From Oikopleura dioica (lineage: Eukaryota; Animalia; Chordata): a DNA stretch of 64,000 nucleotides. Location: assembly GCA_907165135.1 (NCBI GenBank), contig OU015566.1:7812001-7876000 (forward strand), read 5' to 3'. Position numbers and translations under genes: made by a program. This document shows, piece by piece, positions 51,654-57,608 of the stretch (position 1 is the stretch's first letter; every line of letters begins with the position of its first letter). The notes under the pieces were generated by a model, which was not told where the DNA came from, did no database searches, and was given only the letters and a program-made list of their open reading frames with translations.

Positions 51654-54600
51654 TTACTGTTCGATGAATTCCTTCACATGCTCGGCTGTCACTTCAGGAT
51701 CATTGACGTAGAAGTGATGGTTTCCTCCAAAAGGCCAAGTGATTTCCATCCTTTGCAGCGACTTTCCTACAAAAATTTTAATCCTCAGTCGAATAGACGG
51801 TGATTATTTCAACTTACGTAAAAACTCCTTTGCCGCTCTTCCCGTATTACTTTTGTAGACATCCATGTCGATTCCTTTTAAGCCTTCGCGAGTTTGAAGA
51901 AGTGCTTGAACTTTCACATCAGATTCGACAATGGTATTGTACAAATCCTTCATTTGATCTTGACGGGGTTTATAAAAAAATTATCCTTTTCCACATGTGT
52001 GAGCACATCTTACCAACAGAATTAGGGCTATTTTTGAAGAGTGGACTTGCCTCTTATTCATGCATATAAATATCACTCAATTATACCAATCTTCTGATTA
52101 GATAAATTTGAAAGACGTCAATAGTTGAGAACACACCTGAAAATTCCCATCTTATCCATCCATCAGATGATATAACAAAGATTATTTTTATTTGCGAAAC
52201 CCCGGTCCTACGCTCATGACTCCAGGAGTAGCTAACGCTAAGGCGCGGTTCAAATTTAATTGCCTCAACTTGCTTTTGATGTAGCTCTGCCAATTTACAT
52301 ATTTACCCTTTATAACCATATATTTTTAGAATCCTTATGAGAAGATCTAGTGCTTTAATATCTTCGATTTTCGAATTTCCGATTTATATCGGATTTTTAT
52401 CGGTTTCCCGCATTTCCAACGAGTAATACCCAAACAATTATATATTTTCAGAATCCTCTCGACGTGAACTTTTCTCTTATCGAGTTATTTTTCCGGATTA
52501 ACGGTTTTGTCGGTCATTTATCGGTTTTTTACCGGCATTCAAGCTAGATAGTGACTATTATACCTTTTCTGAAAGCACTCATTCAGAACTATTACTTCTT
52601 CATACTTTCAATCTTCAAATCAAAATATTATCGCTTCTTTATCGCTCCGAACCGCGAGAGTCGATTTTTCGACCAAAAAGGATGAAGAGTCACCAAAAGT
52701 TTCTCCCTGTGAAATGAATCATATTTGACCAACTAGAGAATGAAATCGAGCCGAGATCATTTCAAAAAAAAGAGAGAAGCAGAGATCAAAAGAGATAGAG
52801 AGAGAAAGCGCTAGAATCCCTCGCACCAACTGATCCCCGCCACTTTTCAAAAGCGCGTTTTTTCTTTTCTTTCATTATGATCGAGAGACTGTCACTAAAA
52901 AAGAAGAAAGCAGCGAAAAAGAAGATCGAAACGGACATGAATTGAAAAAACTAGAATTGGAAAATGAAATGCTCAAAATGGAAATTGCCAGACGCGTTTC
53001 TCACGCTAAAAATAGTTTCGTGAAAGTATTTCGATGGGCCTGTTGTCGTTTTTTGTCGGTTTTTTTGTGGGGAAAATTGGTTTCAAAGAATTTACAAACA
53101 GTAGTCATGTAAATAACGATTCTAGAGCCAAAAAGAAGCAAAGATCATCAAACCATCAATGGAGAAGAATCTTTCGATGATTTTGGATTCCATTTTTTCA
53201 GTCGATTTACGTAAACTGGACAGTAAAGAAGCGACTTTTGTTCGTCAAATGAGAGGTAAAATCGAAAAGTTGCTACAACCGATAACAAAAACAAAAGCCA
53301 TTGCCACCGGACATTCTGAAACTCTCCCATGGATAGTTCGAGACATCGAATACGATATCATATCAAAGGAAGACATGAAATATTCTGATATGAGCGACTT
53401 CTGGATGAAACATCCAAAGTATAAAGAACTTGACAGATGCCTTGGGGACACACGACCATCTTCATACAGCTCTACAACCACAGATGATGCCCTCAAAACA
53501 AGTTTATGCCAGTTTTTCGAAGAGAATTCCGATTTGGACACACGAGTTCGAAGCGAAGTTCAAGTTCTTGGTCAAATAAAACGTAAACGATATCTGCGAA
53601 AGCCATTTTGGATATTGTTGAAGCAATATAAAGCAGAAAAAGGGCCGGAATGCTGTCTTAACACCCTTCGGAAAATATATAAAAGCATTTTTCCAGCTGG
53701 CTATCTCTTCCTGATGATAATTCTATTCTCCGATGCGTCTGCCCGAGTCACCTTCAAGTGGAACTCTTCTGCAAGGCTATAAATCGAGTTTCTATGCGAC
53801 CTGCAATATCCGAAGAACAATTATTGGGCACGACAGTATGCGAAAACGGCGGACATGCAGTCAGATGCTTGGAAAATGCTTGCTCAACATGTGATGACAG
53901 CGAAGATGGATATGCTCTTGCTCGAGCACGCCTAGAGCTGCTCATGGAACTTGTACCAGACGATGCAGATGTTACCTATGCCCAGCTATGTGAAATCGAA
54001 AAAGTCGACGCCAACAATAACAGATACAAGCGAGAGCAAATTCTCATGCAATGTGCACCAAAGGTGGAGTTCCTTGATTTGCTGACCGACTACCTTCTGA
54101 GAGGATGCATGTCTTCTGGTGCCCAAAAGAAACTGCTGAACCACTACAAACTCAACGAAGAGTACAACTTCAGCAGGAGTCTTCTAGACATCTGCACCTA
54201 CGATAACGATGCCCTAATGATCACGACGGATTACGGTAGGAGTTGCGATCATCAGATAAAGTCCTTACCATCCATCAGAATCAACTTTTCTAGAGGATTC
54301 GAAGGCTCTAGAATATCTTACAGGAAGATTCACAGGCCTAGTCAGACCTATTCCTGATGATCTGGAGGCTCTAGAATGCCTTATAGGAAGATTCACAGGG
54401 CTAGTCAGAACTATTCCTGATGATCTGGAGGCTCTAGAATGTCTTATAGGAAGATTCACAGGGCTAGTCAGAACTATTCCTGATGATCTGGAGGCTCTAG
54501 AATGCCTTATAGGAAGATTCACAGGGCTAGTCAGAACTATTCCTGATGATCTGGAGGCTCTAGAATGTCTTATAGGAAGATTCACAGGGCTAGTCAGAAC

Positions 54601-57600
54601 TATTCCTGATGATCTGGAGGCTCTAGAATGCCTTATAGGAAGATTCACAGGGCTAGTCAGAACTATTCCTGATGATCTGGAGGCTCTAGAATGTCTTATA
54701 GGAAGATTCACAGGGCTAGTCAGAACTATTCCTGATGATCTGGAGGCTCTAGAATATCTTACAGGAAGATTTTGAAGGGTAGTCAGACCTATATAAGACA
54801 TTCTAGAGCCTCCAGATCAACAGGAATATTTCTGACTAGCCCTGTGAATCTTCCTATAAGACATTCTAGAGCCTCCAGATCGTCAGGAATAGTTCTGACT
54901 AGGCCTGTGAATCTTCCTATAAGACATTCTAGAGCCTCCAGATCATCAGAAATAGTTCTGACTAGGCCTGTGAATCTTCCTATAAGACATTATAGAGCCT
55001 CTTGATCATCTGGATTACTTCTGACTAGCCCTGTGAATCTTCCTATATACTTCTGATACTGACGTTATATTATAGCGATGGGTGTCAGTGCCAGAGAAAT
55101 ACAGGAAACGCAAACTATGCATTTCCGGAAGGATGTGTTCCCGCTACTCTCGGATATTAGCTATGGAAAGTGCCCAGACGGAAAGCCTCGGAAGATCTAC
55201 ACACATCTCCTTGCAGAAGTCAGAACTCCGAAGGATCCACAGTTCTCCCTTGCCGGAATCAGAATGTCCTTGGAGAAAGCGTATCAGTTGTATGGCCCCA
55301 AGAAGAACCTCTTTGTACAAAGTGACGGGGCGGAAAGCCAGTTTTGGAGTGCCGAAATGTATTACACCCTTCCCAAGTTCTTCAACAGCCTCGATGAACG
55401 GTTCAACTTCCAGACAATCATCTGGTACAAGACAGTGTCAGGGCACGGAAAAGGTAAGCAAGTCCCTATTTAACATTCTTTTGATTTCGTAGGTGAAATC
55501 GACTCGAGTCATGGCTGCGTGAAGAGAGATCTCACCAACCTCTACAACAATCTTGGCCGTAACGACCTGAATGGGGATGGTCTTGACGTTATTGGTTTGG
55601 TTGACAGCGCTGCTGGACTCGTCGACTACTTGAACAAGGATATGAAATGCCATTTTGGCGACCTTCATAGTGATAAAGATGATAGCCGAGGATACTTTCT
55701 GAGTGGAAGGTATATTTCCGAGTTCCAGCGTGACCCAGACCTTCAAATTGCCGGAAAAACTGTCAACGGCAGTCGATCGGAATGGTTTCATATTATTCAT
55801 TCATCAAAATATCCATAAAAAGTGTAAATTAACCTAAAAAGTATCATATGCTTCGCCTTTGCAAAGACGAAAACGGAAAATGGGAAGAAACAAGGTTACA
55901 ATTCAAAAAACGACCGACCGCCACATTTTGTGAGAGAACTCTCACGAGACAAGAAGAAAAAAACAACATTTGCCCAGACGAAAACTGCCACCTACCATCG
56001 AGCCTCCATTGGATTGACGTTATTCTTAAATTATAATTCTGAAAGTTTCAATAATATTTTCTTCAATAACTATTGCCATCAAAATAAAGGACAAACTGAT
56101 AATTAAGCTCATATTTATAACATTCAGATGATGTAAGATGGTCTTTGAGCAGGGCCATGACCTGCGGAAGCGCCGCTCGCTGAGCAAACGCTTGAGCGTT
56201 CGAGCGCATAAGGTAATATGGCTTTTTCATTATATTTATACTTATAAACCGACTTTTCATACAAAAAAACCGACTAAAACCGACAATAAACGGACATTTC
56301 TACTCACTACACTTTCAGTGGAAAGGACTTGAAATGGGCTTTCAGAAAATGTATCATACCCCTTATCTATCTTGAATATTTATGAAAAACCGATAAATGA
56401 CCGGTAAAACCAGTAAACCGACGTAAAAAGATGACCAGTGGAAAATTGACATCGAGAGGATTCTAAAAATATAAAATTGTCCAAGCGTTACTTGTACGAA
56501 ATGGGAAAAACCGATAAAAATCCGATATAAACCGGAAATTCAAGAATCGGACATATTAAAGCACTAGATCATCACATGAGGATTCTAAAAATATATGGTT
56601 ATATGGGGTTAGTATGTAAACTAGCGAAGCTACATGAAAAGTAAGTTGAGGCAATTAAATTTGAACTCCACCTAAGCGCCTATCTCGGTTGAGCTGAAAC
56701 TTTCCATTCTCAAGTTTCCTCGCTGCTCTTTCAAGCCACAGTTCTTTGGCGGTGTCACTCAGACCTGATCCGAGTCGTTCCATACCAATATCGAGCCTTC
56801 GAAAGAGCTCCTCCTGAAAAAAATCCGTTCCAGACATAACGCATTCCAGAATGACCAACCTTGGTGTTTTGATATTCTTCTTTTTCTCTGTAGTTTACAT
56901 TTTCCAAAAAGGCCTTCTTCGTATGGCCCTTGAAATCGTCCCTGATCAAGGGCATTCCTGCCGAATCGAGCAAGATCAAACGCTCCACTTTCTCCGGGAA
57001 GAGTGCCGTGTACATTCCGGAAACGCCACCGCCAAGAGAATGCCCAATCAAGTTCACTTTCGAGACATCAAGGGATTCAACAATGTGGCTCAGGGCAAGA
57101 GGGTAGATGTTGAATTGATACATCGAGCCATCAGGTAGACGATCTGGAATATTTTTTGAATGATCAAAGTTCAATTTTGGAGAGAAACGACTTGAAAGTC
57201 GAGAAGACTTGTGAGGGAGTGGGCCCGAGGATGCAAATACTCGTCGTTTAGTCGAGTATTTACCCATTTCAAAAACTTGTTGATATGTCAAAAAAGTAAA
57301 TTTATGGGCCATCAATGCTCAGCAAATATTTTTAGCCCAATTTGTTTTTGAACAACTTACCGGATAGGCCGTGCCCAACAAGGTCCAAAGCGATGTAGTG
57401 GTTTTCCTAAAAGTTGGATTTTCATCCTTCTTGAAGCATTATTTTCTACCTGAGGTAGTTTACTGAGAAGAGGCTTGAAGAGGCCGCAATTATCTTGCCA
57501 GCCGTGGAGGCAGACGTAAACGTTTTTCGAATTCGGGTTTCCGATAGACAATCCGCGGATTTTACCCCACGGGAGTTTGTAAGCGACTTGACGAAATTGC

Positions 57601-57608
57601 CCAGACAT
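51654..57608 (-). CDS. SERHL: Serine hydrolase-like alpha/beta hydrolase, split by a 4.4-kb transposon predicted to be spliced out
   Basis: LPWGKIRG, CLHGWQDNCG, IALDLVGHGLS, nucleophile elbow GHSLGG, LILLDS; C-terminal GGNHHFYVNDPEVTAEHVKEFIEQ* at about 51770-51654. Confidence 0.85.
53159..56036 (+). CDS. Intron-containing transposase-like protein (Sola-like motif spacing)
   Basis: CxCxxH and CxxC Cys motifs; spliced TDY|AMG...QETQTMHF; VQSDGAESQF; WYKTVSGHGK|GEIDSSHGCVKR; introns near 54237-55075 and 55454-55492; frameshift or tiny intron near 53696. Confidence 0.75.
54290..55045. repeat. 63-bp minisatellite: ~8 copies forward then ~4 inverted, inside the transposase intron
   Basis: TCTGGAGGCTCTAGAAT recurs at 54361, 54424, 54487 etc.; reverse complement at about 54803, 54866, 54929, 54992; alternating GCC/GTC variants. 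Confidence 0.97.

What the first reader, a model, noticed from the sequence alone, without database searches (positions are those of the whole stretch)
52238..56671. Transposase-bearing 4.4-kb DNA transposon that forms an exact intron and is splice-ready in either orientation (candidate autonomous introner)
Seen in sequence: the element interrupts a coding exon of the minus-strand hydrolase. On the minus strand the junctions read GAT AGG CGC TTA G|GTGGAG...GCGCCTTAG|CG TTA GCT ACT. Removing 56671-52238 (4434 nt) as a canonical GT-AG intron rebuilds the pre-insertion sequence DRRLALATPGVMS exactly and joins the catalytic GHSLGG half to the C-terminal GGNHHF half. On the plus strand the same ends read CTAAG|GC...CTAAG|, a GC-AG intron. 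The CTWAG target supplies AG on both strands, and the element ends supply GT or GC. Established: TE-derived intron gain (introners) is reported in Oikopleura, mostly from short non-autonomous elements. Inference: this family could insert into exons with little cost and be a mobilising source of new introns. TIR divergence of roughly a fifth of positions by eye suggests it has been tolerated for some time.
Basis: partly seen in the sequence, partly recalled or inferred. Interest (0 to 1): 0.92.

Follow-up and report, generated by a model that had tools for sequence, protein, structure and literature searches.

The report
Transposon in exon with splice-like ends
A recently inserted 4.4-kb DNA transposon interrupts a hydrolase gene of the tunicate Oikopleura dioica; its ends could in principle let it be spliced out exactly like an intron, but the public RNA-guided annotation treats the gene as broken, so this is a testable candidate and not a shown new intron.

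Summary
The window is Oikopleura dioica OKI2018_I69 chr1. At 52243-56671 lies a 4429-bp element with about 340-nt imperfect inverted ends, flanked by CTAAG on both sides, inside a coding exon of a minus-strand alpha/beta hydrolase. Removing 56671-52238 gives a 304-aa protein collinear with the 306-aa Bergen ortholog. A 98%-identical environmental contig carries the empty site.

Three more copies in the same genome define the family. The target is G|CTNAG|C with a 5-bp duplication, and the ancestral termini are GT at both ends. The GT...AG geometry is therefore a family trait.

- No copy coincides with an annotated intron.
- The RNA-seq-guided annotation splits this gene into a 215-aa piece that reads into the element and an 87-aa piece after it.
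- A second exonic copy is annotated with the terminal GT spliced to an acceptor only 87 nt inside the element. The same acceptor motif is present here.
- The donor GTGGAG is atypical for local introns.
- The family is low-copy, and this copy's transposase reading frame carries a 1-nt frameshift.
- The arm divergence is inherited, so it is not a sign of age.

The most likely reading is a recent, mostly disruptive insertion. Exact splicing is untested.

The parts
52238..52242 (+). Left copy of the 5-bp direct repeat CTAAG (target-site duplication). On the host (minus) strand its AG, at bases 52239-52238, is the proposed 3' splice site.
52243..56671 (+). Body of the DNA transposon, 4429 bp. Termini are GCGCGG... 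on the left and ...CTCCAC on the right.
56672..56676 (+). Right copy of the direct repeat CTAAG. It forms the last bases of host exon 4 on the minus strand.
52243..52576 (+). Left inverted-repeat arm. It carries subterminal TTATCGG-type repeats and the acceptor-like motif ATATATTTTTAG|AATCC, whose AG ends at 52329 and 52451 on the plus strand.
56338..56671 (+). Right inverted-repeat arm. On the host (minus) strand it supplies the donor G|GTGGAG at 56671-56670. It also has strong acceptor-like sites whose AG ends at 56585 (+87) and 56463 (+209).
53159..56036 (+). Putative transposase gene. The N-terminal reading frame starts at 53159. A 1-nt deficit in an A-run near 53680-53686 shifts the frame. 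The annotated remnant g2093 (P0009, 381 aa) spans 53794-55818. Motifs are DYAM, SDGAxxxFW and GHGKGEID.
54236..55075 (+). Intron of the transposase gene filled by a 63-bp array: 7.8 copies at 54303-54792, then 4.1 inverted copies at 54792-55047. It folds into a hairpin of -541.6 kcal/mol (z -34).
55454..55492 (+). Second intron of the transposase gene, 39 nt, splitting GHGKG|EID.
56672..57608 (-). Host hydrolase exons 1-4 (57608-57450, 57406-57361, 57143-56860, 56813-56672), carrying the GHSLGG nucleophile motif. The annotated g2094 (P0002, 215 aa) runs on to a stop at 56655-56657 inside the element.
51654..52237 (-). Host hydrolase exons 5-7 (52237-52208, 51958-51818, 51766-51654), carrying GGNHHF. 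They are annotated separately as g2092 (87 aa) starting at ATG 52217.
51959..52207 (-). Non-canonical GA-AG intron of 249 nt lying 30 nt downstream of the insertion. It is absent from the Bergen ortholog and has an 8-bp near-terminal inverted repeat, CGGGGTTT/AAACCCCG.

Best explanation
This is a recent insertion of a low-copy cut-and-paste DNA transposon into exon 4/5 of a SERHL-like alpha/beta hydrolase gene. An environmental contig of the same lineage carries the empty site, so the insertion is probably polymorphic.

The element belongs to a rare, unclassified family. Its transposase is predicted to have an RNase H-like fold. It inserts at the palindromic target G|CTNAG|C, duplicating 5 bp (or the central 3 bp).

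The termini begin with GT, or GC at one end in this subfamily, and the duplicated target ends in AG. Every insertion therefore happens to have the outline of an intron whose removal would restore the gene.

Inferred: in practice this allele is mainly disruptive. Transcripts either read five codons into the element to a stop, or splice from the terminal GT to the strong acceptor 87 nt inside the element. Both give a protein of about 215 aa that lacks the C-terminal part carrying the GGNHHF motif. The downstream exons are transcribed as part of read-through or element-initiated RNA. Exact 4.4-kb excision, if it occurs, is a minor product.
For: Insertion and family.
- Inverted ends, duplication and chance control.
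- Empty allele, 98.0% identical and collinear.
- Continuous exon in the Bergen ortholog.
- Four copies with different flanking 5-mers (CTAAG, CTCAG, CTCAG, CTTGG) and the flank consensus G...C.
- Sister copy 97.9% identical.
- RNase H-like core model (pLDDT 70.7) matching RNase HI, PIWI and P-element transposase, with 7 hits at E<=1e-3.
- D/D/E columns conserved.

Disruptive rather than spliced.
- The annotation was made with RNA-seq intron hints. It yields g2094 (215 aa, ending in the element) and g2092 (87 aa) as separate genes.
- The same pipeline did call a 4.15-kb element-bearing intron in UFD1.
- The annotated REX1B model at the other exonic copy is reproduced only by the terminal GT joined to an acceptor at +87. 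The same acceptor motif is at +87 and +209 here.
- Donor GTGGAG: G at +3 in 1 of 26 local donors, G at +4 in 4 of 26, A at +5 in 4 of 26, G at +6 in 2 of 26.
- Trusted local introns are 39-281 nt long.
- No full-length Okinawa-type hydrolase protein exists among 5.8 billion clustered proteins.
Against: - The geometry is exact, and the acceptor CCTTAG is typical for local introns: T at -3 in 12 of 17, and pyrimidine content at the median.
- O. dioica accepts weak and non-canonical donors. About 11% of its introns are non-GT/AG, and a GA-AG intron lies 30 nt away in this very gene.
- The 340-nt arms could pair in the pre-mRNA (-361 kcal/mol) and bring the two sites together.
- All downstream exons are still intact, though the insertion is recent enough for that to be expected anyway.
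- A gene model is not a direct RNA measurement. The RNA-seq came from pooled cultured animals, not from the sequenced male.
Confidence: 0.6

Rival explanations
1. The element is removed efficiently and exactly as a GT-AG intron (56671-52238), so the hydrolase stays functional. The family is an intron-generating transposon (introner) whose target and termini neutralise exonic insertions in either orientation.
For: - Exact restoration of a 304-aa protein collinear with the ortholog.
- GT or GC termini and a duplication ending in AG on at least one strand in all four copies.
- Two of four copies lie in coding exons.
- The arms could pair to juxtapose the splice sites.
- O. dioica tolerates odd splice sites.
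- Known introners recruit one splice site from the duplication in the same way.
Against: - No annotated intron coincides with any copy.
- The RNA-hinted annotation splits this gene and alters the other.
- Strong acceptors compete at +87 and +209.
- The donor is atypical and the length is far above that of local introns.
- Only about five copies are known, and no short derivatives were found in about 200 kb examined.
- Two of four copies in exons is what random insertion into this compact genome could give.
Confidence: 0.2
2. Partial use. The terminal GT is a working donor but pairs with internal acceptors, at +87 or +209 or further inside. This produces chimeric or truncated mRNAs. The AG at the far end serves, if at all, as an acceptor for other donors or for spliced-leader trans-splicing, so that the 3' half is expressed as a separate message.
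For: - The unique solution for the annotated REX1B model uses the terminal GT with the +87 acceptor.
- The acceptor motif is conserved at the same distance in this element.
- g2092 is annotated with a GA-AG intron. From my knowledge of how AUGUSTUS works, it predicts such an intron only when hinted, which implies that the 3' half is transcribed.
Against: - The REX1B intron could be an ab initio prediction without read support.
- No RNA data were available here.
- Trans-splicing at this site is pure inference.
Confidence: 0.3
3. Assembly artefact: the element was placed in the gene by misassembly of Nanopore reads.
For: The assembly is Nanopore-based. The single-base deficits in A-runs could be read errors.
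Against: - The junctions are precise, with a perfect 5-bp duplication of the family's preferred target.
- The host sequence is intact on both sides.
- Sister copies show the same junction anatomy.
Confidence: 0.02

Closest known systems
Introners: intron-generating DNA transposons (Huff et al. 2016; Gozashti et al. 2022, PMC9860276; Gozashti et al. 2025, PMC12130899)
   Same: - Inverted ends plus a short target duplication.
- One splice site (the GT) is carried by the element and the other (the AG) is recruited from the duplication, so splicing would leave the mRNA length unchanged. This is the arrangement described for Chrysochromulina-type families.
- Autonomous inverted-repeat introners are reported in several species.
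   Different: - Described introner families have 5 to more than 2000 copies that are themselves spliced introns, mostly short (median 30-654 nt) and non-autonomous.
- Here there are about 4-5 long copies, and none coincides with an annotated intron.
- Splicing has not been shown.
Transposon-derived non-canonical introns of the appendicularian Fritillaria borealis (Henriet et al. 2019, as summarised in PMC11282704)
   Same: - The host is also a tunicate (an appendicularian).
- The introns carry inverted ends and target duplications at the exon boundaries.
- The spliceosome tolerates unusual ends.
   Different: - The Fritillaria introns are short non-autonomous elements with AG-AC or AG-AT ends, and they are experimentally spliced.
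- This is a 4.4-kb protein-coding element with GT-AG ends and no splicing data.
PIF/Harbinger DNA transposons
   Same: From my own knowledge of the family: insertion into a palindromic target centred on a 3-bp T-N-A duplication (PIF: CWCTTAGWG), with termini starting GG. If the repeat here is read as 3 bp, the target C|TNA|G and the GG...CC termini look alike.
   Different: - The encoded protein has no match to the PIF/Harbinger transposase domain, or to any Pfam family, even at E<=10.
- Its motifs (DYAM, SDGA, GHGKGEID) differ.
- No Myb-like second reading frame was seen.
- One copy has TTG as its central triplet.
Transib DNA transposons
   Same: A 5-bp target duplication (from my own knowledge of the family).
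   Different: - The termini are GTGGRG, not the CACWRTG-type heptamer.
- There is no sequence match to RAG1/Transib cores in Pfam or the PDB.

Membership tests
Class II cut-and-paste DNA transposon with inverted ends | Terminal inverted repeats | tested here: met
   341-nt arms at 80% complementarity. The 24-nt terminal core is found only at the two ends, 0 expected by chance. Sister copies have the same arms.
Class II cut-and-paste DNA transposon with inverted ends | Target-site duplication that differs between copies, and an empty site | tested here: met
   Flanking repeats are CTAAG, CTCAG, CTCAG and CTTGG at four loci. The empty allele is L001, and the Bergen exon is continuous.
Class II cut-and-paste DNA transposon with inverted ends | Encoded DDE/D transposase with an RNase H-like catalytic core | tested here: inconclusive
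   No Pfam match or PDB sequence match. The core model (pLDDT 70.7, pTM 0.70) has the strand-helix order of the RNase H fold. It matches RNase HI, PIWI and P-element transposase at E 4e-4 to 3e-3. The D, D and E/D columns are conserved. No activity was tested.
Autonomous element (this copy) | Intact transposase reading frame | tested here: not met
   One base is missing in an A-run near 53680 relative to the L010 copy and to proteins P0029 and P0030. This shifts the frame, and the annotation keeps only a 381-aa remnant. It could be a homopolymer error of the assembly.
Introner (intron-generating transposon family) | Element plus one repeat copy bounded by splice-site dinucleotides, with removal restoring the reading frame | tested here: met
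   GT...AG on the host strand and GC...AG on the other. A 304-aa collinear protein results. Three of four copies end in AG on both strands. The fourth (L005, CTTGG) ends in AG on the host strand only.
Introner (intron-generating transposon family) | Orthologs or alleles lack an intron at that position | tested here: met
   The Bergen ortholog and L001 have uninterrupted exon sequence there.
Introner (intron-generating transposon family) | Multiple copies that coincide with introns of unrelated genes | tested here: not met
   None of four copies equals an annotated intron. One is nested in a UFD1 intron, two are in exons annotated as truncated or altered, and one is intergenic. Only annotated protein-coding copies could be found, and the whole genome could not be searched.
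Introner (intron-generating transposon family) | RNA evidence that the element is spliced out | not testable with these tools
   No read data were available. Indirectly, the RNA-hinted annotation does not splice it, and no full-length Okinawa-type protein is in the protein collection.
PIF/Harbinger | PIF/Harbinger-type DDE transposase (Pfam DDE_Tnp_4 or Plant_tran) | tested here: not met
   No Pfam family at E<=10 for P0029, P0017 or P0014, nor at E<=1 for the window's reading frames.
PIF/Harbinger | 3-bp TWA duplication in a palindromic target | tested here: inconclusive
   The repeat can be read as 5 bp or as 3 bp plus GG...CC termini. The outer C and G are invariant in all four copies, so the two readings cannot be told apart.

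The most novel reading that the evidence does not exclude
This rare, unclassified transposon family is a currently active, transposase-encoding introner in an animal. Its palindromic target G|CTNAG|C and its GT termini would make every exonic insertion, in either orientation, an exactly removable intron, helped by pairing of the long arms. It would then be caught here at the polymorphic stage, giving a live example of how O. dioica gains its lineage-specific introns.
Probability: 0.15. Interest if true: 0.8.

Novelty: new member of a known kind. Interest (0 to 1): 0.45.

Why it matters
O. dioica has replaced most of its ancestral introns, and how new ones arise there is unresolved. This locus offers several things together in an animal that is kept in laboratory culture:
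- a dated event, with filled and empty alleles that are 98% identical;
- exact knowledge of the pre-insertion sequence;
- an element whose ends mimic splice sites.

One RT-PCR, or a re-mapping of the existing RNA-seq, would show whether a fresh transposon insertion in an exon is born as a working intron, as a leaky one, or as a null allele. Separately, the element represents a transposase family with no Pfam or PDB relatives and only 13 relatives among 1.8 billion representative proteins. That is of interest for transposon classification.

Tried and rejected
1. Other copies in the window. Self-BLAST and a search with the terminal core found none outside the two ends.
2. Metagenome scan with the shared 19-nt terminal core. 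All 33 hits were chance matches with no flanking similarity.
3. More annotated copies, sought with the C-terminal and N-terminal parts of the protein. Only P0009, P0010, P0012, P0029, P0030 and the Bergen protein P0017 turned up.
4. Ends of the Bergen copy (L006) and the Y-region fragment (L007). They were not recovered. The contig ends inside the element, or the copy is truncated. Two 30-nt matches in L007 belong to a large unrelated inverted duplication.
5. Distant relatives on Tara/ENA contigs (L044-L051). No terminal repeats were recovered.
6. Sequence classification of the protein. Pfam and a PDB profile search gave nothing. Foldseek gave only the general RNase H-like fold.
7. Rfam on 48-60 kb found nothing.
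8. A first attempt to rebuild intron sets from gene coordinates produced spurious tiny introns, and a second timed out. Only uniquely solved genes from the third attempt were used.
9. The idea that arm divergence dates the insertion was rejected.
10. Literature. No paper held describes this element or introners in O. dioica. Denoeud 2010 and Huff 2016 could not be read.


Full report
**Origin and host gene**

The hydrolase reading frame next to the finding matches Oikopleura dioica proteins. P0002 is 'Oidioi.mRNA.OKI2018_I69.chr1.g2094.t1' (98% identical), and P0003 is the 306-aa Bergen ortholog. The gene inside the element is chr1.g2093.t1 on record OU015566.1. The window is therefore O. dioica Okinawa assembly OKI2018_I69, chromosome 1.

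The host gene is an alpha/beta hydrolase (Pfam Abhydrolase_1) on the minus strand.

**The observation**

- The inverted arms are 341 nt long and 80% complementary.
- The 24-nt terminal core occurs only at the two ends, against 0 expected by chance.
- The element proper is 52243-56671, flanked by CTAAG on both sides.

I rebuilt the host gene by hand as seven exons. The six introns are, in order: GT-AG of 43, 217 and 46 nt; the 4434-nt candidate; a GA-AG intron of 249 nt; and GT-AG of 51 nt. The product is 304 aa, collinear with the Bergen protein and identical at 231 positions. It runs through NRDRRLALATPGVMSVDQMKDL and ends with the GGNHHF region.

**Empty site**

ENA contig L001 (736 nt) matches the window with the element removed at 720 of 735 positions. 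It reads straight through the site, with two synonymous differences there. The Bergen gene (L003) has one continuous exon at the site. The insertion is thus real, precise and young.

**The family**

A search of 1.84 billion representative proteins with the most conserved exon found only 13 relatives. Further searches found five protein-coding copies in the Okinawa annotation, one in Bergen, and some on marine metagenome contigs.

Four Okinawa copies have both ends:

| Copy | Flanking repeat | Termini | Position |
|---|---|---|---|
| window | CTAAG | GCGCGG / GTGGAG | coding exon of the hydrolase |
| L010 | CTCAG | GCGCGG / GTGGAG | intergenic, internally deleted |
| L009 | CTCAG | GTGGGG at both ends | coding exon of a REX1B-like gene, ten codons before its stop |
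| L005 | CTTGG | GTGGAC at both ends | inside an intron of UFD1 |

- Aligning the flanks gives the target G|CTNAG|C.
- The outer C and G never vary. The repeat can therefore equally be read as a 3-bp duplication with GG...CC termini, as in PIF/Harbinger.
- A GT terminus plus a duplication ending in AG is a family trait. The GC at one end is peculiar to the window/L010 subfamily.
- All three genic copies are antisense to their host gene.

**Age**

The window and L010 copies are 97.9% identical. Their left arms are 98.5% identical to each other and their right arms 99.4%. Left against right within either copy is 81%. The arm divergence is inherited from the source element and does not measure time since insertion.

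**The encoded protein**

- Pfam and a PDB profile search find nothing.
- An alignment of nine relatives shows a cysteine-rich N-terminal part and three conserved acidic motifs: DYAM, SDGAxxxFW and GHGKGEID.
- A model of the core (pLDDT 70.7, pTM 0.70) has the strand-helix order of the RNase H fold. It matches RNase HI, PIWI domains, retroviral RNase H and P-element transposase at E 4e-4 to 3e-3. The full-length model was weaker.

'Transposase' is thus a well-founded inference, but the superfamily is undetermined.

In the window copy one base is missing from an A-run near 53680, relative to L010 and to proteins P0029 and P0030. This shifts the frame, and the annotators kept only a 381-aa remnant. 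This copy is probably not autonomous, unless the deficit is an assembly error.

**Is it an intron?**

No RNA data could be examined, so the evidence is indirect.

1. The annotation. It was made by AUGUSTUS with RNA-seq intron and exon hints from the same culture. It does not remove the element.
   - g2094 reads five codons into it (…NRDRRLGGVQI*, 215 aa).
   - g2092 is a separate 87-aa gene starting at the first ATG after it.
   - I reproduced g2092 exactly using the GA-AG intron. From my knowledge of AUGUSTUS, non-canonical introns are predicted only when hinted. The downstream exons are therefore probably transcribed, yet no hint joined them to the upstream half.
   - The same pipeline did call the 4.15-kb intron of UFD1 that contains the L005 copy. 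Intron length alone did not prevent a call.
2. The REX1B copy. The annotated coordinates and length (127 aa) are reproduced by only one G?-AG intron among 21 possible 87-nt removals. It starts at the first base of the element (GAG|GTGGGG) and ends at an acceptor 87 nt inside (ATATATTTTTAG|AATC). The same motif lies at +87 and +209 from both ends of the window element. In a genome whose introns are mostly about 40-50 nt, this near acceptor is a strong competitor to the one 4.4 kb away.
3. Splice-site quality. Among 26 trusted local donors, the element's GTGGAG has the minority base at +3 (1 of 26), +4 (4 of 26), +5 (4 of 26) and +6 (2 of 26). Its acceptor is typical.
4. Protein collection. No full-length Okinawa-type hydrolase protein is present among 5.8 billion clustered proteins.

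Points in favour of splicing:
- The geometry is exact.
- O. dioica tolerates odd splice sites.
- The arms could pair in the pre-mRNA (-361 kcal/mol).

**Comparison with what is known**

Introners that carry one splice site and recruit the other from the duplication, leaving the mRNA length unchanged, are well described. A few autonomous inverted-repeat examples exist. Among tunicates, transposon-derived introns are documented in Fritillaria borealis and Styela clava. I found no report for O. dioica in the papers held.

This locus has the anatomy of an introner but fails one defining feature: copies that are themselves introns. A second defining feature, RNA evidence of splicing, could not be tested here.

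**Verdict**

- Most likely (0.6): a young, mainly disruptive insertion whose intron-like outline follows from the family's target and termini.
- Efficient exact splicing has about a one-in-five chance and is directly testable.

No step had to be referred.

Noticed in passing
window 54236-55075 (arrays at 54303-54792 and 54792-55047); also L005 9215-9942, L007 29715-30458, L010: The first intron of the transposase gene is filled by a 63-bp tandem array followed by inverted copies of the same unit. It folds into a perfect long hairpin (-541.6 kcal/mol, z -34). The array is kept at the same place in diverged copies (59-98% protein identity). The unit is 21 codons long and open in some frames, so one annotated protein (P0030) reads into it. 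Distant relatives on Tara contigs also have an inverted-repeat cluster, but after the GHGKxEID exon.
   Followed up: partly
window 51959-52207 (minus strand): A 249-nt non-canonical GA-AG intron lies 30 nt downstream of the insertion. It is used by annotated gene g2092 and is present in L001 but absent from the Bergen ortholog. It has an 8-bp perfect inverted repeat (CGGGGTTT/AAACCCCG) a few bases from each end, which suggests an older transposon-derived intron in the same gene.
   Followed up: partly
window 57144-57360 and 57407-57449 (minus strand); L002; L003: Introns come and go in this gene between lineages. The 217-nt intron 2 is absent from Bergen. The 43-nt intron 1 is present in Okinawa and Bergen but absent from ENA contig L002, which is 94.5% identical.
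   Followed up: partly
window 56585, 56463 (minus strand) and 52329, 52451 (plus strand); L009 about 11035: A conserved motif, ATATATTTT(T/C)AG|AATCC, sits at +87 and +209 from both ends of the element, reading inward. It looks like a strong splice acceptor and appears to be used in the annotated REX1B model. It could equally be a transposase-binding repeat.
   Followed up: partly
window 53680-53686 and 55835: There are single-base length differences in A-runs between this copy and the L010 copy. The first breaks the transposase reading frame. Either is a real mutation or a homopolymer error of a Nanopore-based assembly.
   Followed up: partly
L003 3999-4389 (Bergen, FN653015.1): An unrelated 391-bp miniature element has perfect 18-bp inverted ends (CTAGGATGGCCACCGACA) and an 8-bp duplication (ATTAAGAA). 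It sits 26 nt inside an intron of the neighbouring EamA/TPT transporter gene.
   Followed up: no
L007 16454-26530 (Y-specific region, OU015570.1): A large near-perfect inverted duplication has arms up to 754 nt at 98-100% identity, spanning about 10 kb. A truncated copy of the transposon family is fused by the annotation into a 1560-aa chimeric model with reverse-transcriptase domains.
   Followed up: no
L005 7469-11517: The UFD1 copy lies only 7 nt upstream of the host intron's 3' splice site, yet the annotated gene still uses that site. A 4-kb insertion next to an acceptor is apparently tolerated.
   Followed up: partly
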